Source: Zygnema circumcarinatum SAG 698-1b (Eukaryota > Plantae > Zygnematophyceae). Taken from it: a stretch of 64,000 bases of DNA. The stretch lies in NCBI GenBank assembly GCA_037447605.1, contig CM074805.1, forward strand, positions 1,211,361 through 1,275,360. The letters run 5' to 3'. The notes under the pieces were generated by a model. The model ran no database searches and was not told the DNA's origin. It worked only from the letters and a program-made list of their open reading frames with translations. Both the position numbers and the translations under genes were made by a program. Shown here in pieces: positions 7,001 to 26,600 of this stretch (positions are counted from its first letter, which is position 1; each line of letters begins with the position of its first letter).

Positions 7001-7708
7001 GCGTTTGTGAACCTTGTGAGACATTGTGTGGTAAGGCTTTCACAGCTTGCATGGAATTGTAAAATCTCGCACCTGCTACGATGCTCTATTCAATTGTGTG
7101 TAAGAGAGGATACAAACGGAAGCTCGAACAAATCGTTTTCCTGCATGCAGGTGAATGAAATGGATTTTGACGGAATGACTTTCAAGGACCAGATCAAAGC
7201 AGTACAGGCCGCTGACATCGTCATCAGTCTACATGGAGCCGGGCTCACAAACGCAGCATCATTTGGGAAGAGCGGGGCGGTAGTGATCGAAATCATGCCC
7301 TATAAAGTCTACCTCGACATGTTCGGCATCATGGCGGTGAACGCCGGGCTTTCCTACATGATGCATCAATGCAAGAAGGGACCCCAGCAGCCCAAAGATG
7401 AGCTGTTTGACCACATATCCACTGCAGAATGCAACAAGCTCAATATGAAGTGCCTGCAATATTATTTGCAGTACAGGAATGTGGAGTTGACTGCGACGGA
7501 TTTCTACGAGTTGGAGGAGCTCTTAAAACTGGCTAAACGCATGGCTGAAGATACGAGGCGAGGACTGACTGCAAGCAGCCACTTGAGGGGTCTGTTTGGC
7601 AGCCTTTGTCTGGCGAGCAAGAAGGAAATTGGATGCAGAGAGAATATTTTGAGATCGCCCGCCTTCAACGCCTCCACTGTGTGTGTGCTCTACTCCGACT
7701 GCTCATAA
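4058..7708 (+). CDS. Glycosyltransferase family 61 (DUF563) protein, multi-exon, with N-terminal signal/anchor
   Basis: Hydrophobic N-terminus MKGLVFLCIIFAEHILL, then a Cys-rich segment. Last exon (from ~7151) has MTFKDQIKAVQAADIVISLHGAGLTNAASF..GAVVIEIMPY, typical of GT61. Exons ~5601-5874 and ~6441-6651 join in phase 0. Small exons between 4560 and 5600 are unresolved. Confidence 0.85.
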
Positions 7709-8416: not shown

Positions 8417-11400
8417 TTACAACGAAGCATACCAGCCCAGGGCCGAGCCTTGCTTCACCTGTATGGGACTCAGAAAAGCAACGAATGCCCCTGAAAGTGC
8501 GGAGACAATGAAAAAGATGATGACTAGTTTGGGTCGGTAAGAGGAAAAGGCAACCCGTTTCCTCTTCTTAGGTTCTGCCTCCCACATTTGTGTCTGCTCG
8601 GCAGGCAACTGAGCCCTGTTTCCCATTGCCATGCACTTGCAAAGTCCTCCACAACAAGGCCGAACTTGTTTCGGCTTCGAGCAGAGAGACAAGCAAGAGA
8701 TGAAGCTCCCCACGAGAAGTGAGGTGATGATAGCAAGCAGCAGCATCTGCTCTCGTTTCTCCACCGCATCCAATTGCAGCCTGGAATAGAAGAAAGCAAC
8801 CAGTCAGCCTTCTGAAGAAGCAAGCTAGCAGTTCAAAAACCAGAAATAACACTCCTTTTCGCAAGTCTTCCATAAGGCAGAGCGCACCTCATCAGCGCCA
8901 CCTCAGCCATAGAAACCTCATGGCGTGACATCACCTCCTCTCGCAGTGCTGCCATCTGCCGACTTCTTTCCTCCTCCTGATTGTACAAAAAAAAATGAAT
9001 GTACAGAGATGTCCACGTATGAATACACTGAACTGTTGCATAAGCATACTTAAGTTCCACCAACGCGACAAGTGTTGGCTCAGGTAAATGCAGTTATCAG
9101 AGATTACATCGAGACATATCGAAGACGAGGAAACTCACCAGATTGAGCAGGCGAAATGCCACATCTGCAACAGTTAATGAAACATTTCGGACCTTTTCCC
9201 GCAATGCTGCTAAGTCTGTATCCATATCACTTAACGCCTCCTGCTGCGTTCGGACTGTGTGATCCACGTATCTGTCAAGAAGTGACTGGTTCAATTCAAG
9301 GCCGCGAACCTTATTCATCAACGCCTTGAAAACGAAGTCACCGCCTGATCGACCTGTGGAGCCTCCATTGTGTGCAGAGTGACCAGATTGACTCTGACTC
9401 CCTTGCAATGGTTGTGGCGGATTCGGTCTGTGAGCCTGGTTACCATTTGAAGTAGCCGAAGGAGAACTGGCAGCATGTTTCTCTCCCACATGAATTGGTA
9501 CCCCGGGGATGGGCTGCTGCTGAGAGGCAGCATCCTGCTGACCCAGTGTTTCCAGCGGAGTCTCAGTGTCTCTTCTATTTATTTCCACCCCAGATGCCCC
9601 ACCACCTCCAGCAGGAGGTAGTTCATCTTCTGCTGTAGAACCTGTTTGGACTGGATGCTGCGCATTGGGATTATTACCTTCATTGACCAAAGCAGAATGT
9701 GTGACCCTTTCTGATAGATTGTCTGATCCTGCCACAGTTCCTTCCACTGGAGTTTCTGCACTAACTGCACCAGAGGAGCTTCCTGCGCCTCCGGACACAT
9801 GAATATCAAGTGTCCCTGAACTCTTCCCAAGATTGTTGCCGTCCCCTTCAGGAAGTGAATGTTCTGCTGCCGCCACAGGCCTATCTTGGTCTCCTTCTGC
9901 AGATAGCCTTGGTGCAGCCTCAGCTATATCTAAATCTGAGAGCACATTTCCTGCTGCCGTTACAGGAACTGGCGTAGGTCGCCGTGCAAAATCTGACTCT
10001 TCAACTTCTTGCCTCATAGCTTCCATCTCCTCTTTGATGGACTCCAGTTCGTCCACTCCATGAACTCTCACCACACTTAATGTACAGAAGAATTCAGACC
10101 CATGGTGAGTCAAGAGGTTCAACCTTACATAACGAATCAACGATCTGCTTTCCACATCACCAACTTCAAAGGTCTGGGGAGTCCGCACATTCTGTGCAGT
10201 AAAGTTTCCAAGATAAATCCACTCATCACTGGGATAATGAAATGCACCATAAAGCTCAAAGCTTCGCATTGTTGAAGAGTAAAATTCGTAGTTTCCAAGG
10301 ACGATCGACTCTACTCTAGTAAGTGTTTCAGAAAGTTGGATCACGATGAACTTCTTCTCCACGCTGCAGGGACTTCTCATGTATTTGTCCTTGTCCTCGT
10401 CCAACACAGCTCCTGCTCGCATCGCCTCCTTGTTCGCTGCGACCACTTTGGCTCCATATATTGCCGCTGCATAATTGTACAACGAACCATCAGCAGAGTT
10501 CCTCCTCGCATTTGAGGCTGGAACGGCATAGGTGCTTTCATTTGGCGTGGACACCCAAACCTGCTCGCTCAGAGATTTCTTGTACTCATCAAGGCCGGGA
10601 GGCCGAGCTCGCACAGGCCGAGCCTCACGCTCCGTGTCTGCATTGATAGCTACCTTAGCACGTGGCTCTGTTTCACTATCCGAAAGAGGCACAGAAACCG
10701 AGCCTTCAGAACTTTGTGTGGTCTGTAGGTGAGCTGGCTCGGATTTTACTTGCCCAAAAACAGTGGGGGGGGTTAAACCTACAGGGTCAGCCGGTTCTGT
10801 CTCAGTCGCCTCTTCATAACTTCGGCTTCCTACAATACTGGAGCTCAGAACTCCCAGCCCAACATCGCTGCAAAATGTATCCTCACCGTGCACCCCATGC
10901 AGCAGCCATTCCAGGAGCTGCACGCCGTGTAACGGAGTTATCTTGCAACTACCTTGGAAGTCCAAAACACGTCTTTGCTCATAACCCGCCCTTCCATCAG
11001 GTGATTTTGCTTCAATTCCTGCATGGGCGTCCAATGTATGCTCATTTTGCTCTTTGCCCTTCGCAACAACATCCAGAGCTGGGCTAAGCTCGATATCATC
11101 GTCACTTCCTCCTTCCCCTTCAGTCAGATCACTTGATGTATGCCCTGCCTTGATGTCTATTCCACGAATGACTCCATTCCCTACAACATCTGCATTCTTC
11201 TCATTCTCCAGCTGTTCACCATGACAAAGCAAGCTGATGGATCCCTCTTCTGATGCATCCTTTAAGTCTGACCCGAGACAATGTCCTGTATTCTGACTTC
11301 CAGTCTCGTCCTTGCAATCGGATTTGTCACCTTCCTTCGTTCCTTGCTCTTTCCCTCCACTCTGCTGCTCAGAATGAGCTGCAACAGAGGATTCAACACT

Positions 11401-12059
11401 CTGTAATATTGATTCCTCCCCAACAGAGCCCCCAGATCTGTCGCGTGCTCCATCTTGCGAACTGCCAAGGGGTCCACTTGAACCTCTCTGTACCTCCGAT
11501 CCGTCTCGTCCTATTTGCTGATCATCTGCAGAAAGAATCAACAAATGAAATTACAAAAACGAACCAATGAAAGCACGGCTAATGCATACAAATGGATCAA
11601 TCCTCTCAGGATTTTTATTTCAGAGTCACTCTAATTGGCAATTCGAGAGTACGTCCGTTCTCGATAGCATGTCTTCATGATTTTCGGACAGTCAGAGCCT
11701 CATCTCTATGTTATGCACAAAAAACCAACCGTCACTGGAGGCAACACTACGAAAATTAAGCATTAGGGAAAGAAATTTTCGAATAATGGGACTGAAATCA
11801 AGACTTTGATAAGAAGTTACTGACCGTGAACACTAGCTGTATGATATGCGCACAGGAGCAGGAGAACGGGCACAAGGAATCCGCTCCATCCGAGAAAGGC
11901 GCGAAAAGAACGACTATTCCGAGCGTGCAACTTATGTGAAGCTCTTCCGTCCAGGCTAAAAGTTGATGAACTTGTCAGCATCTCCTCAAGGCCATGCCTA
12001 TGCTGGAGACGTGTATCTGCTTCAAGGTCATCCGCGCACTTCTCAGTTCCTGCAAGCAT
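8417..12059 (-). CDS. Mid-SUN (Sad1/UNC-84) domain protein, SUN3/4/5-SLP1-SUCO type
   Basis: Large exon 11525-9139 has YNYAAAIYGAKVVAANKEA..AVLDEDKDKYMRSPCS..KKFIVIQLSETLTRVESIVLGNYEFYSS..CTLSVVRVHG, followed by coiled coil MNKVRGLELNQSLLDRYV. N-terminal TM in exon 12059-11825; C-terminal hydrophobic segments in last exon. Confidence 0.93.
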
Positions 12060-13712: not shown

Positions 13713-14909
13713 ATATCATCTTTCTTTCCTATTGGTAACACGGACCTTATATTTGCAAATTCCAATATGTTCGCCCAGTTTTTGCCGAAACCATGGCGAA
13801 AATATATTATTAAGGGGGGGTACTGCACCCCGATTCTGGACACCGCCTCTTCCGTATCGTACGGTAAACGGCTTGTACGGAACATTTTTGTTTGACTTGT
13901 GGCGAGGCCGTACGGAAAGACCGTATGGTCCGCTCTAGTTAAGTCATGTCCGCGGCATGCTGCACGGAACACGCTGAACGGCGAGCATGGAGACGGCCGA
14001 GGGCAGCTGGCACTTGCGGCTCAACCACGTTGGCAGTACACGTGGCGAATCCCCGATGGCTGAAGGTGGAATGTATGGGAAAAAACTTGCAAGGGCCCTT
14101 CGTTCCTTTCTGAGGGCTGGACGAGTACATGTAGGAGAAGGAGAAGGGGGAGGGGAAGGAGAAGGGGAAGGGGAAGGGGAAGGGGAAGGAAGGGGGGGGG
14201 TGGGGTGGGCTCTGCTTGAAGCAGGCTGCAGGCTGCAGGTTGCTGTGATCCAATGCGCATGCGGGAGCTGAGAGCAGGGGAGGAGATATGTGGCCTCCTG
14301 CAGCGCGGAGCAGCGGGAGGTTTCTAATGCAGCGTGGGAAAGGAGATCTTTGGATGCTGGAAAGGGCCGGTTTGAGCACAGGGCTGCTGTATCTGGAGAC
14401 TGGTTCGACTCGGCCCTGCTTATGAAGTAATATTTTCTTGTGTGCGGGTCCGAATCCCGAAGATTTTGGATGGAATTAAAATCTTGACTGCATACTTGAT
14501 TGCAGCAGATGCAGGCCACGAGGAGATAGTCAGATGTTGTGAAAAATGTATGGCCTGAGATACTTAACATGCAAGAATGAACAGGAACCTTTGACGTAAA
14601 CGGAAATGACGGAAACGGTTACTGTATACTACGTAGTGGAATACATTCAAAAATATGAAAAGACTGTCGTGGCCTGGCAGGCTACGATCTCAACAGGAAA
14701 GAGAATAATCATGCTCTATTCTGCGGGAGAGCCGTTTCGTATAAACGGTTGTAATAGTAACTGCAGAATTGCAAAAAAAAATTTCTCACTTTTTTTTTTA
14801 AATTGCGGTCACATGCGGTGTTTGTTTTCTGACAGTTGTCCTCCACGTTCTTGGCCAGAATACGTTCCTCTGTCGACCCTTGTGTTCCTTACATCAAAGC
14901 GTGCGAGTT

Positions 14910-17900
14910 ATGGATGCACTTTCGAGGGAGTCTGAGGAGTGGACTTTGGCATCCGATAAGAAGGTGAGCAAGTGTGCTTTCCCATTGCCGGGACATTTGT
15001 GACCGGACAACCTTCATTAAGACCGTTCTGGACATTAAGCTCTCCAGTAAACCTTTGTTCAAGATCCAATTTATCTTGATATTGCTTCAGATGTCGCCTC
15101 CCCGCTGCCATCCCTGTGCTTAGGCGCCCGAGACACCCACTTCCCCCGGCCCTCCTTTCGCTCTCTTTTTAGGATGCATACACACACACCAAACGCACAC
15201 GCTCTCGCACATCACTTTTGCACCCGCATAAACATACACAAGTACATAACGCAGGAGGTGTAGGTTTCCTTTAGTACCGGTTTTTTAAAGGGATACCTTT
15301 GTGCCACGAAGTTCAGAATGCTGACTGCTTCATTTTTCTGGTTCTTCTCCCTTGGGGTGTTCCCTAACTCCCTTTACGGCCCCGAACGCTGCAATAGCAA
15401 CTGCCACATATATGGAACTCTTTCGCTAATCTCTCCCGCTTTTAAACGAATAGGCCATTGCCAAACACCTTGTTAAAAGGTCATCTGGCAGTACGGTTGT
15501 GTGTCCCTAAACTGCGACTATCTTGTAGGGCAGACTTGCATTGAATGAGATAGACGGATCCTAAAAATCGTAACTTGCCGACTTGTAGTCCAGATTCGAC
15601 TCCACGTTTTGTCCTTTTTCCTTTGGTCGAGTAATCTGTTCATCCAGCAGATTGACCTTCAGATATTTGCTTACTTGAATTATCTCGGCTTGGGAGGCCG
15701 CATTCAAAAAATGTCGACCGTTTTGTTCTATTACTGTATTTGGTTTTGTCACAAGAAAATAATTGTTCACCTAGGGAGCCTTATGCGTTTTATGCTTGCA
15801 CCAATATATCATTGTGGGTATAATTAAAAGGTTTTGTAACAGACTACGTTCTATTCGGGGATTTTTTTCTCAATAGTTGAAAGGGCTGTCGTGATTTCCT
15901 AGACAGACCTATGGTACGTTTCTTGGTTTCCACTTATGTGTTGGAGTCATACAATCTTCTTAATTCAATAAGAAAGAATTCAAAGTAGGAGTTGGCATGA
16001 ATATACATAGTACATCTGCATGGCGCATCTTGAAAGAAAATTGACAAGGCTATGAATTGTATGGCTTGAAATTCAATGAACGTATGATGAAGATGGCATT
16101 GTGCTTGTTTGGTGGTAATGTGCGGTCCACAGGTAGAGAGTCACTCGTCGCTCATAGCCTTTTATGTGGGGTAAACAATCAAAGACAAAGTCAAGAAGAG
16201 GTTCTATGCAATGGAGTTTGAACCAAACTGTTATAGTCGTTTAGGTGTAATTTTCTTAAACTTCTACTTATGGTAGGGCCGATACGAGTTAGAATCCTGC
16301 TTTAAGGTGGTCAATGCACTCAGGTTATGCCATTGTATCAATGGTGAGCTGGGAGCCTCTTGAACCATGCAGATTGTATTACTTTTCTGATCAGCTGAAG
16401 TTGGAGGCGTGAAAGCATATTTTTTACGATCTGTAAACTGAGCTATTGCAACAGCTGTTGTCTGCCGGTGGAATTTTAAAATAACTGTGGCGATCTTATG
16501 TTGTTTTCCAGTTATTGGATTGGATGCAAGCCTTCACGACCAGAGTGGAGAGACGGTGCCATGGCGTGGGCTCGCGCATCGACCTTTTGTTGGCGCAAGT
16601 GAAGGCGTTGGATGCCAGCTTGCAGAATACGTGCAACCATTTTTCGTCCCTCTCAAGCAGCCAGTACCTTGAAAATGTATAAGGAATTTTCATGATTATT
16701 CAAGTCTGATAATGCAGAAATGTCTTTTCTAATTTTTATACGACTTTACTTGGAGAGCAAAGAAAGCAAAGCAAAGGAAGTCATGTTTGTGAAAAGACAT
16801 GTTCATTGGGTTGGAGTTAAATGGAAGTAGATTTATGTGTGAACTATGCAATCATGAGTATTGACCTATGACAATGTCCTGGTTATGCAAGGAATAAGAC
16901 TGACCAATTAGAGATCTGTTGCAAATCTCTAGTTAGGCGTTGTATCTTTTCTCCTGGTTATGCTTGTCTCCCCTTTCAAAGCGAGAGTTCATCTGGTCTA
17001 TTTTCCTTCTGTCTTTCTCATCCTGGCAGGGCACTCTAGTGCAGTTGAACTTTATCAGCATGTTCGAAAGCACTTTTTCACAGCTTTACTGACTTATGTC
17101 TTCAATCCTCTCTCTCTTCATTTTGACTTCTCTCACAAACATCACAGCTGACTGTGTGGCTGTGCGTGCCCTCTTTCAGCGCATAGCGGAGGAAGATGAG
17201 GTGGTGGTACGAGCAAATCCGGCCGATGCAGCTCAGCAGCCATTGCCCTCTGTTGGTGTAACGGAAGCGGATATCCATTCTCGTTACAGACGAGCGACAC
17301 ATGTGGCCTTGCAGGCAGTTCAGTCAGCCGTAGAACAGACGCAAGAAGTGATGCGGTCAGGAGCTCAGCGTTTGCCACTGATGCATGCCAAAGGGGCTGT
17401 GTCGTTTGTAAGTATATTGTCTCACCTCTTTTTCTAGGCATGGGTACGGTTGACTGAGGATACAGGCGTAGCTGATGCAACCACTTTTACCTTCTGGTTG
17501 ACTCAACTGAAGTTAGCTATGAGCACGTCGTGAAGGAACAGGTGATCGCTCTGTATGGCTTCGGTATTTGCTTGAACCCAAGATTCGTGTCCGTTCAGTA
17601 CAAGCCTTCACGTGTGGGTTCAGGAATTTCCGGGGAGAATCTATCAAGTTCTTGCTGTTTCTGATGCATGACCGGTGTTTGAGTTTTTAATCGTTTCATC
17701 AAAATGAGCTTCGTTGAGTTGTAGAGTTCTGCACATGAACATTGTTAAGCACTCGGTAGGACGGCCTTTCCGGGAAGTTTTAATTGCCATCACACCAGCT
17801 ATCAGGAATACCCTCCTTTTCTTAATATATGTCCCCCTGTGGTGTTTTCCAGCTTTTGAGATGGTGCTTTGTATGAATTAGGATGCCTTCTCTGCACAAA

Positions 17901-20900
17901 CTTCCCAAAGACGTGAAATCCTGCAAAGGGAACCGACCCTGAGGAGATCACTTTTGAACTGAATTTTGGTGTGGATGCAGGAAGGCCCCCTCCGACCTCT
18001 GCCGTACATCATTGGCAGCGCTGCATATGCAAACGACTCAGCATGTGGTCTGGCGGAGGCAGGTGAGTGTAGGACTCGAACTAAACCCCCATTCATCAAG
18101 TGAAACAACACATCTGATTAATGACCAGACATCCAGATAGGCAGCATTGTATGCAGCGCACATAAACTCCCTTGCCCACGTTTGATGCTTTTAGCTCGCA
18201 CAGAAGGCTGTGTGATCTTCAGTAGTGCAGGTGAGAGTGAGAGAAGTTGAAGAATTCGATGGGGAGGGAAGGGTTGCTGAGTTTGACGCTGAGCACTATC
18301 TGTGGGATGCAGCCGGCAATCGCGGAGGTGGCTTCAGGGGAGCACCTGCTCCCAGCAGGCAGTTGCGAGAAGAGAATAATACATGGAATTATTCAGAAAA
18401 CCTATCGCAGAGCTTGGAGGAAGGAAGAAGTGGGGCAGGTTCAGCAGATATGGCTTTCAATGCGAAGGTATTTGGCATTGCAATCACACCTTTCTCCTGC
18501 CTTGGTGCAGTTTGCAGGTGCATTGGAAAGCACTTTCACTTTGACCAGTCAGTGGGAATTTTAAGACATTAACGCTTTAGGGATTCTGTTCGTTCTGACA
18601 TTGTCAGGTAGCCCGGCAATTTGGCGATGACACAAGACAGGCAGACGGACAGTCTGTGAGTGGTAACAGAAGTAGGAACGGACACGTGGCATCTCCAGGA
18701 GCCACATCAAGCGGAACTGCGGGTGCAGAGATTAGGGTTGTGGAACCGGCAGTTTCTACTGTGGACGGGTTCAGAGCTATGTTGGAGGCAGCGTTGAGAG
18801 GACCTGCTGACTTATGTGAGATTCTATGGCGACTTTGCATAGGGGAACGGAACGTTCTTATTCGTGAATACTGGAAGGAAACATGGGGACAGGGAGAATG
18901 CTCTTCAGTTCTTCAGATGGAAATGTAATTTTGCGTAGCTGCTGAATAGCTGATGTTCATCAATTCAAGCAAGATGCAGTTTGTGTGGGATAAATCGGTT
19001 TCTCTTTTTGTTTTCCTTTTTGTTCCCTTGCCCATGGCAGATGATGATACCATTCCAGATGGCATGGGTTTGCTCTCCGAGCCAGCAATATTCCAAGATG
19101 ACTACTATGATCCTATCGCGGGAGGGCCCAACGTTAGGGAAGGTTTCAATAGTACCTCTTTCCGCTCTTCTCTTTTTCCCGAGGGTGCAAATGTCGAAGG
19201 CGGTCATCTTCAAAATGAAGTTCTCTCTTCTCAAAGAGAGGCAAACGGGGACATGGCAGTGGATATTGACAGGCAGCTGACTAGTCGAGAAGAGGAGAAT
19301 AAGAAGGTAGACCCAAAAAAAGTGGAATCGTCTGCTACCTTGGATAAGCAGAGAGGGAGGGCATTGGACTTTAAGGCAGTTTTGGGCTTGGATGTAGAAG
19401 AGGACGATGAGGATCTTTTTGGACCCAACACTGTTTCAAAGGTAAAGGGCTAAACCTGTCGGTATCCATGCCGGTAAGTTTGAGGCATGCCTGTTGAAAT
19501 GTACTCTTTTTGCAATACACCGGGACAGTTATTCCTTACTGCCCATTCAGACACCTTCAGTTCGGTTGTTTACGGTCTCTTACTGTGCTGCATATGGGTT
19601 TTGGTGTTTTTAGTTGCTGTCTGGACAGAGAATCGTTGGTCATGATGGTTTGTGCTGACGTCTGATGGGCTATGGGAGCTGCTACAGACTTCCCAGACCC
19701 GCAACATCTCAGAAGGAGCATTGTTTGACAAAAACAAGAAAATTGCGCAAGAGGAAGGTGAGCGCGTAGCTCCCAACACTATGCATGCAAGGATGGGGCA
19801 TGTTGGCAATCTGTTGTCGAAGAGTATGCACTGCAAGGGCTAAAGGTGTCACAGTATGGCTTGAAATTAGCCTCTTACTGTTTGAAGACACTGCTTGCAA
19901 AAAGAAAGGGTAGCATTTACCTTTGAGAGTCCCTGCTAGAAGTGTCATGGAAATCGCCAAGCTTAAAGTACGGTGTTAAATATGGAAAAAGGTTTGTGAC
20001 CTCGAATCGTCACCTGGTTTTCCTCCATTTCTGACCTCGCTCACGTCGTATGCGTGTCTGCGACGTTTGTTATTGTGTAAAGGGGCAGCAGTTTTCAGTG
20101 TAAAGGGCGAAGAGAGCAGGAAACCGAAAGCAGCATATAGCCCTCCGCCGCCTCCTCCTCCTGTCAGTGCTTTTGTAAGGAAATTAGCTCCAGCAAATCG
20201 CGGGCTGCCAAGTGGCGGCCTATTTGATGAGGAGGAGGATGAAGGCTTTGAGGATGCGAGTGCTCCTCGTCCTGACCGAACTTCCCGAGGAGAATTCAGA
20301 AGCTCTGAGGAAGGGAGGAAACTTGGAAAGAATGGAACAAGTACAGAGACAAGAGGTTCTACAAGCTACAATGGAGGTAGACATCGCTTACTAATGAGAA
20401 GAGAAACAGTGGGAGCTTAGCCGAATGGGAGGCCGACAGTGTGAATGGTTGCATGCATGTTTATTATGGTTTAGAGGCAAGACTGAAGCTGCATTGGAGA
20501 AGGACTTTCTAAGGTATGGGGGAGGAAGTGTAATAGCCAAAACAATGACAGAAAAAAATCGTACAGAAGGACTACTTGATGGACGTTCAAAGGAAACCGA
20601 TTAGTTCACAAAATGGGCCGGTGAAACTGCATGGTTGTAATGTAAAATCGGTGGGCACAGCTGGGAGCTCAGGAATTTTTTATGATGACAGTGAGCTGGA
20701 GGATGAAGGCTTTGTAGCGGGTAGCACTATGCACGAAAAGTTAGGGCATGTTGCCAAATTTTTGTTAAAGAGTATGCACTACGCAAGTGTTGAAGGTGTT
20801 ACGCTATGCATTGAAATCAGCCTTTACTGTTGAAACACTCTGCTTGCAATAATTAAAAAGTGGCATTTATCTTTAAGAGTCCCTGCTAAAAGCGTTGTGG

Positions 20901-22934
20901 AAATCACTTAGCCGGAAGTACTTAGTCTGGAAAGGGATTTGTGACCTTAAATTCCTCCCGGTTGTTCTCAATTTCTGACCTTGCCCACTATATGCGTGCC
21001 TGTGATGTTCGTTATTGGGAAAAGGGGCAGCAGATCTCAGTTTGAAGGGCGAAGTGAGCAGGAAACCAGAATCAGCATATAGCTCTCCACGACAGATGCC
21101 TCCTCCTATTAGCGCTTTTGTAATGAAAATACCACCAGCGAATAGCAGGCTGCCAAGTGGCGGCCTGTTCGATGATGATGAAGAGGAAGACTTTGAGCAT
21201 GCGAGTGGTCCTGGTGATGGCCGAAGCAGAGCATTCAGCAGTTCTGAGGAAGGGAGAAAGCTTGGAAAGCAGGGAGCAAGTACAGGGACAAGCAACTCTT
21301 CAAGCTACAATGGAGGTAGGTCATTGTTTACTGCGGAGGAGAGAGGAGGTGGGAGCTCAGCTGAAGGGGAGGCCGACAGTGTGAGTGGTGGTAGCAATGC
21401 TACTGTCAATGATGGTTATAAAGGCAAGATTGAAGCTGCATTGGAGAAGGGTTTTCTAAAACTTGGGGGAGGGAGTGTAATCACCAAAACTGTGGCAGAA
21501 AAAAATTGTATAGAGGGACTATTTGACGTTGGACAACAAGGAAAACTGATTAGTTCACAAAATGAGCCGGCGAAAATGGATGGGTGGAAGGAACCTAGCG
21601 TAAAAGCTGTGGGCAGAGCTGGGAGCTTAGGACTTTTTGACGATGACGATGAGCTGGAAGATGAATTTCATGTAGGGCCTGGAGAGAGGGCCGCCTCAAG
21701 AGGAAGTAGTAATGGAACTAGCAATAGGGCTGTCCCGAAAGAAGAACCCATTTCATTAAGTGGACTGTTCGGGATTCCATCAAAGAGATCAAGTGAAAAT
21801 GCGGTACAAGGAATACTGAAGTTAGAATCAGCAACATTCCCTAGGAAAGGGGGATTGTTTGATGAGTCAGAAGATGATGAGGAAGGAAGCACCGCGGCGA
21901 TCGAAGAGACAGTAAGTGAAGCAGACAAGTATTTGTCAGGGATCGGTTCGGGAGCTGTAGAAGGTAGACAAGTACTGGCGGGTGCAGTACGAGTGCTTGA
22001 AGAGGCATCATCTGCACCAAGTGTCAACGCATCCACGAGGTCCAAGCTCTTGGCATCTGCAGTTGCTGCTTTGAGGAGGCCCAGGAGTGACGAATCAGAA
22101 GATGAATTTGAGGTATCTCAATCGGACGAAGAAGAAGAAAATAAAGTGCCACAAAGTACTGAACGAAGGATTTTTGAACCTAAACCTGCAGATGAGGGCT
22201 GGGTAATTGGGTCGGATCAAGAAACGCGTGTGGCCGAGTTCGACTCTGGAAGGGCCGTGGAGGGGAGGAGAGTCGAAAGAATGGAGAAGGATGGAGCAGA
22301 AGGAGCAGAGAGAGAGGGAGATAGGAAGGTCGCAGTACGGAACGACATGAATCAGATGAATTTTGCCGTTGGACTGGAGGCCGCTCTCAAGAGGAGGGCA
22401 GGTGGCGGAGGTTTGTTTGGAGGTGATAATGATGAAGCTTCAGGAGACGAGGAGTCCCCGAGAGAGAGATTCCTAGGGATGAAGGAAGGTGAGGAAAGCC
22501 GGTCAAGTGTGAATGGGCAAGGTGCAGGAAATAGTCCAGTTGATCCTGTCCGAGAAATTTTGGGAGAGAGAAATATATTTAGTGCCGCTTCATCCATCAA
22601 TCGGGCATCAAATGTTGACATGAATAGCGAAGTGATCTCAAGAGCTGATGGTAATGGAATTAGTCACATCGGTGGGTTGCCTCAAGGCCTGGTAGTGGCT
22701 CCTGAAAAAAGATTGCTGGGTGATGGAGCGAGAGCAGAGGACCACGGTGGGAGCACCTCTTTCAGTTGGAAGCCGGTGATAGGGAAGAGAGAGGTAGAGA
22801 AGTTGGGAGGGGAGAAAAAAACATTTGATTCATTATTTGGAAATGATGATGATGAAGAAGAAGATGCTCTGTTTGGGCCGCTGAATGGAAAAGGATCAAA
22901 GTTTACCTCTAGTGATCTCTTTAGTCGAGGGTGA
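14910..22934 (+). CDS. WASHC2: WASH complex subunit 2 (FAM21) homologue; exons 14910-14963, 16512-16676, 17180-17407, 17981-18062, 18223-18467, 18608-~18817, 19041-19441, 19697-19757, (20089-20376 possible), 21031-22934
   Basis: Manual splicing gives EEWTLASDKK|LLDWMQAFTTRVERRCHGVGSRIDLLLAQVKALDASLQNTCNHFSSLSSSQYLEN|RIAEEDE..EADIHSRYRRATHVALQAVQSA..|EGPLRPLPYIIGSAAYANDSACGL. This is collinear with the FAM21 head as I recall it (WSLAADAGLLQFLQEF..LSNTQFIENRVYDEE..RPLPYLIGS). A long acidic disordered tail with repeated LF+acidic motifs follows. All junctions are GT-AG and phase-compatible. Confidence 0.9.
19755..21680 (+). repeat. Intragenic tandem duplication (~960 bp period, intron plus exon start) within WASHC2
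   Basis: 19755-20715 is collinear with 20716-21680 (e.g. CACTATGCA..GGGCATGTTG, GAGAGTCCCTGCTA, AAAGGGGCAGCAG acceptor, GCTGCCAAGTGGCGGCC). Confidence 0.92.
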
Positions 22935-23621: not shown

Positions 23622-26600
23622 TCACTTGGCCAGCTCATCCTGTATCTCCTCCAGACTGAGGCCCTTAGTTTCCGGAACTTGGAAGAAAACAAACGAGAGG
23701 GCCATCATGCCAATGATTCCAAAAGTGAAGAACGTGCCCGCTTGCCCCAAAGTCTCCTGCAAGAGAAGTTACAGACATGGATGGGGAAGCAACACAACCG
23801 CCACATGGTTACTTTTTCACCTCACATTCATCTTACATAATAAACAACACAATCAAGTTTATATGCTTTTTTTTATACACTTTCAACGCAAGTCAGACAA
23901 CCGCAGGTTAGACATTCCAGGTCTGCAGAGTGCAGCTTAAAGATATGTGCAAACCCTCGTTTGCAATAGACACTAATGCTGGTCGGGCCCTCACTACCAG
24001 GAAAGGGGTTTTTACTTGAATAGGACGGAAAGAGAAGGCGACGAGAGCGTTAGAGCCGAAGTTGACAAGAGTGGCGATGCTCTGAGCGCGGCCCCGCACT
24101 CGGAGGGCAAACACTTCCGAAACCATCAGCCAGGAGATTGGGCCAAAGGAGACCTGCAGTGAACCAACTCATTTCATCTTTTTAGGAGGAGTAGGAATAG
24201 CCCAAAAACAAGGGAATGAAACGACCTAAAACTTGCTTCATCCCTAGAGTATTGACTTGAAGTCCACCATACCAGTTACCATAATGCACGAGCAAAATGT
24301 GCACAAAAGAACATCTCATTCCCTTCCCCGCACCACCCAAGTTTTGACACTGCCAACAGCTTAAAATCAAGATAGCATGTGGTTGAAGGGATCCGTGAAG
24401 TTCTGAGCAACTGAAGGGCAAAGTATGAATATAGCCCAAAACTCAAACTGGTTCGCGAAGGTAGGCCAGACACAAGCCCCGGCTTAGAGAAGGTGTGAAG
24501 ATGCTCAGAGAACAACAAACTGTTGTGAAATTACCTGATATGCTCCCACGTATAGCAAGAGAGAGGCAACACTGAGCAACGGATAGCCTCCTCCGGCGGC
24601 ATACACGGATGCGAGGGAAAAGAGGCTGAGGACCTGTAGACACGTTGAGCAGTTCACAGCTTGGTACTGAATTGCGGAGGCTTACATGTCCCAGTAAACC
24701 AATCTACTCTAAAAACTCACAATTTTCAAAGCTTAAAACAACAGTTAAAACCAGGCAGCAATCGCTCCTTCCTTGTGGTGGACATCTAGATGCCGCCTTC
24801 GCATCATTCTTTATGTGTGAGGCAGGTAACCTTGCATGGCGGCAAGAAGATGCCCCTTAGAAAAGGATAAATCTGGGGAGTGAAGTGCTCTTACTAAGCC
24901 TGAGACTCCAACGAGCAGAAGGGGCCGACGCCCCACTTTATCCACAGTAAAGATGGCAATTCCTGTCATCAAGAGCTGCATAATACCAAGGAACAGTCAT
25001 ATGAGTTTGACATCTGGAGATATGATTCATCAGGAGCCTGCTTTACCTCCCTTATCAAACCATAGGCCATCAGATAGTCATTCACTCTAACACTGCGAGG
25101 TATGTCTTTTTCCATTTTTATCCCATTTTGGTCTCCTGATGACTTTTCTTGCCCCCACTTTCTCCCCTCCATTCCCACCTTGAAAAAACCGAGCACCACT
25201 GATACTCTTGTCGCATCCGCAGCATCAGCAAAGCCCGCATCCTGTCAGCCACACGAGGTCCAACCCTTCAACTCTCAGCTCTGAGAAGGGTGATGGGAAA
25301 GTCAATCCAAGCAGCTGCTACTCCGAGGGAAGAGGCAAACTGGCCATAATCTGGAATTTCAAAAGTATGACAAGCACTCATGTGTGCGTTTCCATACAAT
25401 GTCATGTCATATTATGGGATCGTATGGATGTCGAAGTTCACATGGATACACGGAAATGGCCATAGCGATATGAAGTTGCATGTATTTTATGATGCAGACA
25501 AAGAGCGTACCTGCAGAATGGAGGCTGCATAGTAAAGGACGCTCGGCTGCCCGGTCACCTGACTTCCCAAAACAAAGGGCTCGGAGGACAGTTAGAAGCT
25601 CCATATAGTGATTGTGAAACAGCGAAGGAAACAACAGTTGCAAAGAAACTCTAGCATTGTTCATCACAGAGGTCGACGAGGAAGAACATAGAACGACTCA
25701 CGATAAAATAAACCATCTGCTAACAACTCTTATTGCACACAGAAGCTAAGCCCTTACTAGTAACCTTTCCAGAAAGTGGACCCTTCCTTCAGTTTTCCCC
25801 TCCATGCTCACTTAGCTCACCTGCTGGAAAAATACCAGACCAGCCCCCACAATAAGAGCTTGCAGGTTTGTTCCCTGCACGAGCTCTTTGAATCCGTTTT
25901 CTTCCGCTCTTTCACCCTCCGATTGGACGGCGATCATTTCCTCCACCTCCGCCTCCACCGCCAATTCGTTCGAACTATTCCCTCTCAGCCTTGAAAGAGA
26001 TGCCTTTGCTCGAGCCACATAGGCCTCCCTCTCGCTCCCCTCCCCGCACTTTCCTGCTTGCAAAACCAACCAACGAGGAGAGGGAGGGAGGACGAACATG
26101 CCGATCCCCATAATGGCTGCGAGAGGCAGCCCCACGCCATACATATCTCTCCAGCCCCCCTCTGTACCGATGAAAAGGTTGCCTGTGAAGTAACCCAGCT
26201 GCAGAGCAGGCAGGAGGAGGGTCACGTCAGTTGGAAGGAGAAGAATGTTGGAATTGCTGTTTGACAGGGTTAGGAAAGAGCAGCTTAGAGACAGTCAGGG
26301 GGGTATATACCAGGATGCCGCCCACAATGAAGCCTTCCTTTAGAGAGATGAGAGTGCCCCGGACACTTGAGGGCGAGCATTCCGCAATGTACATAGGGGC
26401 GGCATGCATCGCCTGGAACACTCCAACAATTAATGTAAACGTTTAACATATAGATCATGAGCTAGCCATATGCGTCGAGAATTGCAGTCAAGAACTTGAG
26501 TACAGGAGGCAGTCATAGAAAGATGAGTTGCAGAAGGGAAGGAGGGGAAAGGGACGGCTATACATACGAGACCGATGCCAAGCCCATAGAGAAAGCGACC

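What the first reader, a model, noticed from the sequence alone, without database searches (positions are those of the whole stretch)
14910..22934. A full FAM21/WASHC2 gene in a plant-lineage genome, implying a WASH-retromer endosomal actin system
Seen: four short exons (14910-14963, 16512-16676, 17180-17407, 17981-18062) splice in phase into a peptide collinear with the FAM21 head (WTLASD..LLDWMQAF..LQNTCNHFSSLSSSQYLENRI..RPLPYIIGS). Three of these exons are absent from the ORF track in this frame. An FRAMLEAALRG motif follows (cf. FADELAARIKG), then an acidic tail with roughly ten LF motifs (e.g. GGLFDDDEEEDF, GLFDDDDELED, GGLFDESEDDEE, SLFGNDDDEEEDALF). Established: in animals and Dictyostelium FAM21 scaffolds the pentameric WASH complex (WASH1, FAM21, CCDC53, SWIP, strumpellin) and its LFa repeats bind retromer VPS35 to drive Arp2/3 actin on endosomes. 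To my recollection WASH1/FAM21 are not described in model land plants such as Arabidopsis; this needs checking. Inference: this alga retains an ancestral WASH-dependent endosomal recycling machine, uncharacterised in streptophytes.
Basis: partly seen in the sequence, partly recalled or inferred. Interest (0 to 1): 0.9.

Follow-up and report, generated by a model that had tools for sequence, protein, structure and literature searches.

The report
FAM21/WASHC2 gene in a green alga

Summary
All four proposed head exons have AG/GT borders, and their three junctions appear in spliced contigs from four public RNA runs. The same contigs show six more junctions. The result is a 10-exon gene (14910-22934, + strand) encoding 1182 aa.

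The head is a true FAM21/WASHC2 head:
- A profile of streptophyte orthologues hit, outside plants, only proteins named "WASH complex subunit 2" (E 2e-29 to 2.5e-14).
- A head-only profile-profile comparison gave 99.75% probability, E 3.4e-27.
- The spliced head scored 66 bits against lamprey WASHC2.

The acidic tail has 6 strong and about 10 permissive LF-acidic motifs. It ends in one canonical LF-acidic-LF repeat followed by G-P-L-N. This resembles the human last repeat FDDPLNA, which binds retromer VPS29. No capping-protein (CPI/PF15255) motif was found.

The wider inference of an intact WASH-retromer machine is plausible but could not be tested here. Only unverified scan notes mention CCDC53 and a VCA tail elsewhere in this genome.

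Novelty is modest. WASH1 was reported in Ostreococcus, Physcomitrella, Selaginella and Picea by 2012. The moss FAM21 orthologues, however, are still labelled uncharacterized or hypothetical.

Verdict: a new member of a known kind.

The parts
14910..14963 (+). Exon 1: start codon and the W-T-L-A-S-D start of the FAM21 head
   Evidence: Translation. Joint 14963|16512 seen in all 4 runs. The contig runs on upstream of 14880, so there is a 5' UTR. The N-terminus matches the start of orthologue P0001.
16512..16676 (+). Exon 2: core of the head (long helix; signature N..N.F..LS..Q(F/Y).EN)
   Evidence: phmmer against 1.84 billion proteins found P0001 at 62% identity, at the same residues 19-73.
17180..17407 (+). 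Exon 3: second head helix (I..RY..A block)
   Evidence: 66% identical to P0001.
17981..18062 (+). Exon 4: the RPLPYIIGS...CGL motif, the end of the region alignable to animal FAM21
   Evidence: The motif aligns to animal RPLP(H/Y)(I/L)IGS.
18313..18467 (+). Exon 5: linker
   Evidence: Joints 18062|18313 and 18467|18608 in all 4 runs.
18608..18815 (+). Exon 6: holds the invariant F-R-A-M-L-E-A-A-L-R-G helix at 18770-18802
   Evidence: The motif is invariant in 8 streptophyte sequences. AlphaFold2 predicts a helix at residues 260-276 of P0001.
19041..19441 (+). Exon 7: start of the disordered acidic tail, ending in EEDDEDLFGP
   Evidence: Joints in all 4 runs; collinear with P0001.
19688..19757 (+). 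Exon 8
   Evidence: Joints 19441|19688 and 19757|20092 (alternative acceptor 20083).
20092..20376 (+). Exon 9: exon from duplication copy 1, with the motif PSGGLFDEEEDEGF at 20220; alternative acceptor at 20083
   Evidence: joints, and loose ends at 20376/20377. The loose ends map uniquely to 21034 and 21026.
21034..22934 (+). Exon 10 (alternative acceptor 21025) up to the stop codon: LF-acidic motifs at about 21165, 21633, 21855, 22413 and 22833
   Evidence: The acceptor comes from the loose ends. The frame is open throughout and collinear with P0001. The word share of run X1 only roughly suggests full coverage.
22833..22886 (+). C-terminal module: LF-GNDDDEEEDA-LF followed by G-P-L-N. This is a canonical LFa repeat plus the only Pro-Leu in the tail.
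   Evidence: Compare the human R21 motif FDDPLNA bound in the VPS29 pocket (PMC11010949, PMC11331091) and IF(D/T)DPLNALGG at the C-termini of lamprey and fish WASHC2.
19766..20707 (+). Tandem duplication, copy 1 (intron 8, exon 9 and decayed former exon sequence that is now intron 9)
   Evidence: the repeat finder: nine blocks at 76-85% identity, spacing 939-958 bp. Stops in all three frames over 20377-21024, within intron 9.
20714..21665 (+). Tandem duplication, copy 2 (end of intron 9 and first ~630 nt of exon 10)

Best explanation
The locus is an intact, transcribed, 10-exon orthologue of FAM21/WASHC2 in a green-lineage genome (very probably a streptophyte alga). Shown here: the gene structure, its expression, the homology of its first ~175 residues to the FAM21 head, and a long acidic, Gly/Ser-rich tail with LF-acidic motifs. 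Inferred from work on the human protein: the helical head inserts the protein into the pentameric WASH regulatory complex. The tail would tether that complex to endosomal retromer. [quoted passage not shown] WASH would then activate Arp2/3 and build actin patches at recycling domains. This protein appears to lack the capping-protein-interaction (CPI) motif, so direct regulation of CapZ is probably not part of its job in this lineage.
For: Transcripts: nine GT..AG junctions in spliced contigs of four runs from four studies. The ORF is intact at 1182 aa. Homology: exon 2 alone finds the 1153-aa orthologue P0001. The model is collinear with it from the first residue to the C-terminal LF...LFGPL (E 2e-93). 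The streptophyte profile A3 hits, outside plants, only proteins named WASH complex subunit 2 that carry PF15255. Head-only hhalign gives 99.6% against lamprey and 99.75%, E 3.4e-27, against an animal head profile. The spliced head against lamprey WASHC2 gives 66 bits by phmmer. Atlas neighbours of the P0001 head are WASHC2/FAM21 clusters. The tree puts the window protein inside a 100/100 green clade, sister to P0001, so it is native and not contamination. Motifs: LF-acidic counts and the C-terminal LFa plus PL. The definitions and binding modes come from PMC3374753, PMC11010949 and PMC11331091.
Against: No Pfam family matches any piece, and no solved structure matches. There are far fewer LFa motifs than in animals (about 6-10 against 21-26), and only one has both LF dipeptides. 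The F-to-PL spacing is one residue shorter than in animals. P0008/P0009 have LFGAL instead of LFGPL. No CPI motif or PF15255 match was found. The other WASH subunits, Arp2/3 and retromer were not examined in this genome. The interior of the last exon was not checked with reads.
Confidence: 0.85

Rival explanations
1. A FAM21 orthologue that has outlived the WASH complex. The gene is real, but WASH1, SWIP or strumpellin are lost or decaying, as reported for most plants. The protein would then serve another role, for example as a retromer or CCC-complex adaptor using only its LF-acidic tail.
For: PMC3689024 states that, apart from Ostreococcus, no plant was reported to have the full subunit set, and that WASH genes are often absent or fragmented. 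The CPI motif is lost here. No scan note mentions WASH1, SWIP or strumpellin.
Against: The head, whose only known role is incorporation into the complex (PMC3374753), is the best conserved part across streptophytes, with about 45 invariant positions. In animal systems, as far as I recall, FAM21 depends on the other subunits for stability. Unverified notes report CCDC53 (s1-343996) and a VCA tail (s1-387194) in the same genome. A lack of notes is not evidence of absence.
Confidence: 0.12
2. Not FAM21 at all: a generic coiled-coil head with an acidic low-complexity tail that resembles FAM21 only by composition.
For: There are no Pfam or PDB hits. The tail is compositionally biased. AlphaFold2 gives only isolated helices.
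Against: The head-only comparison excludes the tail and still gives E 3.4e-27 over 164 columns. It shares specific motifs: WSL.SD, N..N.F..LS.TQF.ENR, IPR, RPLP(H/Y)(I/L)IGS and GL. All non-plant hits of the profile are WASHC2.
Confidence: 0.02
3. Contaminant or horizontally acquired gene from a non-plant eukaryote in the assembly.
For: In pairwise score the head is about as close to lamprey (66 bits) as to mosses (58 bits).
Against: In the tree it sits inside a 100/100 green clade. It has plant-like neighbours: GT61, a sugar transporter and a SUN-domain gene. It is found at 99-100% identity in runs from several independent studies of the same organism label.
Confidence: 0.01

Closest known systems
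Human/vertebrate FAM21 (WASHC2A/C), subunit of the WASH regulatory complex
   Same: N-terminal helical head of about 175 alignable residues with the same motif order. A long disordered acidic tail with [L/I]F-acidic repeats. The last repeat at the extreme C-terminus is followed by a Pro-Leu-Asn. Similar overall length (1182 against about 1340-1460 aa).
   Different: Only about 6-10 LF-acidic motifs against 21 or more, and only one with both LF dipeptides. F-G-P-L-N instead of F-D-D-P-L-N. No CPI/CapZ-binding motif and no PF15255 match. Head identity is only about 30-35%.
Unannotated streptophyte orthologues (P0001 transcript; Physcomitrium patens and Ceratodon purpureus 'uncharacterized/hypothetical' proteins; P0008-P0010)
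   Same: The same head, the invariant F(R/K)AMLEAALR(G/S)P helix, GGLFDD-acidic motifs, and the C-terminal LF-acidic-LFG(P/A)L.
   Different: The window gene has a species-specific ~945-bp tandem duplication that adds one LF-acidic motif. P0010 keeps a CPI-like motif (LHHATMSRPRGPPKRRAPT) and has an N-terminal VHS domain. The moss gene models stop early (671-685 aa).
CapZIP/RCSD1 (the other PF15255 family member)
   Same: An acidic, disordered protein that shares the central CAP-ZIP region with animal FAM21.
   Different: CapZIP lacks the FAM21 head. The window protein has the head and lacks the CAP-ZIP region, so it is FAM21 and not CapZIP.
Abi subunit of the WAVE/SCAR complex (the plant Arp2/3 activator complex)
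   Same: By established knowledge (Jia et al. 2010, cited in PMC3689024), each WASH subunit is structurally analogous to a WAVE-complex subunit.
   Different: There is no detectable sequence similarity, and this was not tested here. The window protein matches FAM21 specifically.

Membership tests
FAM21/WASHC2 | N-terminal ~200-aa head domain homologous to the FAM21 head (the part that incorporates into the WASH complex) | tested here: met
   hhalign head-only: 99.75%, E 3.4e-27, 164 columns. phmmer of the spliced head against lamprey WASHC2: 66 bits. The profile's only non-plant hits are named WASHC2.
FAM21/WASHC2 | Long disordered acidic tail with multiple [L/I]F-[D/E]3-10-[L/I]F (LFa) repeats | tested here: met
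   The tail from residue 251 on (~930 aa) is rich in G, S, E, A and D. It has 6 strong and 10 permissive LF-acidic motifs. Only one is fully canonical (residues 1150-1163), and the number is lower than in animals.
FAM21/WASHC2 | C-terminal last repeat with a Pro-Leu motif (the VPS29-pocket binder in human FAM21) | tested here: inconclusive
   ALFGPLNG is the only PL in the tail, 17 residues from the C-terminus. It is conserved in P0001 and P0010 but is LFGAL in P0008/9. The resemblance is at motif level only, and binding was not tested.
FAM21/WASHC2 | Capping-protein interaction (CPI) motif / Pfam PF15255 CAP-ZIP_m | tested here: not met
   No Pfam hit on any exon. No CPI-like pattern in the protein or in any frame of 14-24 kb. 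P0010 has one, so its absence here looks like a lineage loss. This feature is not needed for head-based membership.
FAM21/WASHC2 | Co-occurrence with WASH1, CCDC53, SWIP and strumpellin in the same genome | not testable with these tools
   Only this 64-kb window can be read. The unverified notes s1-343996 (CCDC53) and s1-387194 (VCA tail) are leads.
FAM21/WASHC2 | Expressed, intact gene (not a decaying fragment such as the WASH1 remnants in grasses) | tested here: met
   Nine spliced junctions in four runs. An uninterrupted 1182-codon frame.

The most novel reading that the evidence does not exclude
Streptophyte algae and bryophytes keep a complete, working WASH complex. It would be recruited to retromer by a compact, conserved C-terminal module (LF-acidic-LF-G-PL) that engages VPS35 and the VPS29 pocket just as in humans, but without the capping-protein (CPI) arm in this lineage. 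WASH-retromer coupling would then predate the split of plants and animals and was lost only later within seed plants. That would contradict the common textbook line that plants have no WASH complex.
Probability: 0.45. Interest if true: 0.55.

Novelty: new member of a known kind. Interest (0 to 1): 0.4.

Why it matters
Plant cell-biology reviews still say that the WASH complex is absent from plants (PMC8905187). Flowering plants rely on SCAR/WAVE alone to activate Arp2/3. An intact, expressed FAM21 is shown here in a green alga, and sequence relatives, still unnamed, exist in mosses. This gives a concrete handle on how endosomal actin and retromer recycling worked in the ancestors of land plants, and on when the system was lost. 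The conserved C-terminal LFa-plus-PL module suggests a simple binding experiment with VPS29/VPS35. Physcomitrium offers a tractable knock-out system. The basic point, that WASH is ancestral and survives in some early-branching plants, was already published in 2010-2012, so this is an extension and not a surprise.

Tried and rejected
- Pfam on seven exon or ORF pieces gave nothing relevant. Pfam has no model of the FAM21 head, and PF15255 is absent here.
- PDB sequence searches with exon 2, with P0001 and with the head profile gave only chance hits. No FAM21 head sequence was matched among solved chains.
- The search for homologous proteins with the 639-aa last ORF found nothing. In hindsight the 1182-aa full-length protein lies outside that tool's length window.
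- My own first guess for the exon-5 acceptor (18223) was wrong. The transcripts show 18313.
- AlphaFold2 of the P0001 head with an 11-sequence alignment gave a mean pLDDT of 56.7. Only isolated helices were confident: 13-67 and 97-122, and weakly 260-276. I ran no fold search, because isolated long helices give meaningless matches.
- The proposed equivalence of FRAMLEAALRG with animal FADELAARIKG could not be shown. The two motifs sit at the same relative place, but hhalign stops at the GL motif.
- I looked for the organism behind P0001 through its run accessions in the papers library and found nothing.
- The Derivery and Gautreau 2010 paper on WASH-complex conservation is not held, so I could not check whether it already lists plant FAM21.
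- Word searches of the scan's notes for WASH, strumpellin, SWIP and retromer were blank. That says nothing about absence.
Full report
**Observation**

Each is bounded by AG and GT, and together they read in phase. I found public runs that hold this stretch and laid the contigs of four of them, from four studies, on 14880-20879. All four runs contain spliced contigs, so they are RNA.

They show these joints:
- Six more: 18062|18313, 18467|18608, 18815|19041, 19441|19688, 19757|20092 (alternative acceptor 20083), and a donor at 20376.

The partner of the 20376 donor lies outside the laid stretch. The loose ends behind it map uniquely to 21034 and 21026. This gives acceptors at 21034 and 21025, nine bases apart and both in frame. 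Every intron is GT..AG.

The gene therefore has 10 exons. Its coding sequence is 3549 nt and encodes 1182 aa, or 1185/1188 aa with the alternative acceptors. Its frame is open and it is collinear with an orthologue. The word share of run X1 (0.53 of 8035 bases) is roughly what full coverage would give, but that is only an estimate.

**What it is**

Pfam and PDB sequence searches on the pieces gave nothing.

An exhaustive phmmer of exon 2 (55 aa) found a 1153-aa protein, P0001, at 62% identity over residues 19-73. That is the same position as in my model. P0001 comes from 3.9-kb transcript contigs. My spliced model is collinear with it from the first Met to the C-terminal LF...LFGPL (E 2e-93).

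A search with the P0001 head found proteins from the mosses Physcomitrium and Ceratodon, labelled 'uncharacterized' and 'hypothetical', plus unnamed transcripts.

A profile of six streptophyte sequences (A3) then hit, outside plants, only proteins that their sources name WASH complex subunit 2. These came from lamprey, three fishes and a midge, with E-values from 2e-29 to 2.5e-14 against 5.8 billion sequences. Four of the five carry PF15255.

To exclude an effect of the acidic tail, I compared heads only:
- hhalign of the streptophyte head alignment against the lamprey head gave 99.6%.
- Against a profile of five animal heads it gave 99.75%, E 3.4e-27, over 164 columns.
- phmmer of the spliced window head against lamprey WASHC2 gave 66 bits.

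The alignment shares these motifs in the same order: WSL.SD, N..N.F..LS.TQF(I/V)ENR, IPR, RPLP(H/Y)(I/L)IGS and GL. Language-model neighbours of the P0001 head are WASHC2/FAM21 clusters.

A maximum-likelihood tree puts the window protein with P0001 (95/98) inside a green clade (100/100), opposite the animals. The gene is therefore native and not a contaminant. Other agents' notes call this genome a streptophyte alga. I did not verify that beyond this tree.

**Anatomy and likely mechanism**

AlphaFold2 on the P0001 head gives these features:
- A confident long helix at residues 13-67 and a second at 97-122.
- A weak helix over the invariant F(R/K)AMLEAALRG block.
- Disorder everywhere else.

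This is what one expects of a subunit that folds only together with its partners.

In human FAM21 the first ~220 residues incorporate the protein into the WASH regulatory complex. The ~1100-residue tail carries 21 LFa motifs that bind VPS35 (PMC3374753). Crystal structures show two binding modes. [L/I]F-acidic-[L/I]F repeats bind basic grooves on VPS35. [quoted passage not shown]

The window protein's tail from residue 251 on (~930 aa) is rich in G, S, E, A and D. It has 6 LF motifs followed by at least four acidic residues, and 10 by a looser count. It ends in SLF-GNDDDEEEDA-LF-G-P-L-N-G, 17 residues from the C-terminus. That Pro-Leu is the only one in the tail.

LFGPL is shared by P0001 and P0010. 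The lamprey and fish WASHC2 proteins end in IF(D/T)DPLNALGG.

I therefore infer that the head joins the WASH complex, and that the tail, above all its C-terminal module, docks on retromer VPS35/VPS29. Only the sequence features are shown here. The binding and the existence of the complex in this organism are inferred.

**Differences from the animal protein**

There is no CPI (CapZ-binding) motif and no PF15255 match in the protein or in any frame of 14-24 kb. Another streptophyte transcript, P0010, keeps a clear one: LHHATMSRPRGPPKRRAPT. Compare the conger sequence TLQSTNKGRAKGAGRRRPQTRAAR. The motif thus looks lost in this lineage.

The LFa number is lower than in animals, and most motifs have a single LF.

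**A feature inside the gene**

A ~945-bp tandem duplication lies within the gene: copy 1 at about 19766-20707 and copy 2 at about 20714-21665, at 76-85% identity. It duplicated the end of an intron and the start of the large last exon.

Both copies are used, each with the same pair of acceptors nine bases apart. Copy 1 contributes only 285 nt (exon 9). The rest of copy 1 has decayed into intron, with stops in all frames. The result is one extra PSGGLFD-acidic motif compared with P0001. This is a small, concrete example of how LFa repeats multiply.

**What is known, and novelty**

Kollmar et al. 2012 reported WASH1 in Ostreococcus, Physcomitrella, Selaginella and Picea, with decaying fragments in grasses and loss in eudicots (PMC3298513). 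Yanagisawa et al. 2013 state that only Ostreococcus was reported to have all five subunits, and that elsewhere in plants the genes are absent or fragmented (PMC3689024). [quoted passage not shown]

An intact FAM21 in a green alga therefore fits the published picture of an ancestral WASH complex that survives in early-branching green lineages. New here are:
- The explicit identification of the FAM21 subunit in streptophytes, where database entries are unnamed.
- The transcript-supported gene model.
- The conserved C-terminal LFa-plus-PL module.
- The apparent loss of the CPI motif.

I could not read Derivery and Gautreau 2010, which may already list plant FAM21.

**What could not be done**

The intact-complex inference needs a search of the whole genome for WASH1, CCDC53, SWIP, strumpellin, Arp2/3 and retromer. 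None of the tools reads this genome beyond the window. Two unverified first-reader notes in the same genome mention CCDC53 next to COMMD2 (s1-343996) and a WASP-like VCA tail (s1-387194). They are leads, not evidence.

**Verdict**

- The gene identity is supported with high confidence.
- The system-level inference is plausible but untested.
- The novelty is modest: a new member of a known kind.

Noticed in passing
window 19766-20707 and 20714-21665: A ~945-bp tandem duplication inside the FAM21 gene (76-85% identity). Both copies supply an exon start with the same pair of acceptors 9 nt apart. Most of copy 1's former exon sequence has become intron 9, with stops in all frames over 20377-21024. 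The net gain is one LF-acidic motif.
   Followed up: partly
window ~21314-21322: Copy 2 keeps the donor-like site GGAG|GTAGGT at the position homologous to the exon-9 donor that is actually used (20376|20377).
   Followed up: no
window 14963 -> 15091: A minor alternative joint (skips 127 nt, GT..AG) seen in one run only (X7, depth 10 against 38). It suggests an alternative exon inside intron 1.
   Followed up: no
window 20348-20879: An unspliced contig covering intron 9 at about one sixth to one third of the exon depth in all four runs. This indicates intron retention or pre-mRNA.
   Followed up: no
P0010 (streptophyte transcript from Logan), residues 1-190 and ~994-1013: This FAM21 orthologue carries an N-terminal VHS domain (PF00790) ahead of the head. 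It also keeps a CPI-like capping-protein motif, LHHATMSRPRGPPKRRAPT, which the window protein lacks. The VHS part could be a real fusion or a chimeric contig.
   Followed up: partly
window 9097-11544 (-), 7007-7708 (+), 23622-23762 (-): Neighbouring genes: a long single ORF with a Sad1/UNC (SUN) domain (E 2.4e-27), a glycosyltransferase-61 fragment, and the last exon of a sugar transporter convergent with the 3' end of FAM21.
   Followed up: partly
P0005 / P0007 (Physcomitrium, Ceratodon): The moss FAM21 gene models (685 and 671 aa) end right after an LFGDSD motif and lack the conserved C-terminal module. They are probably truncated annotations.
   Followed up: no
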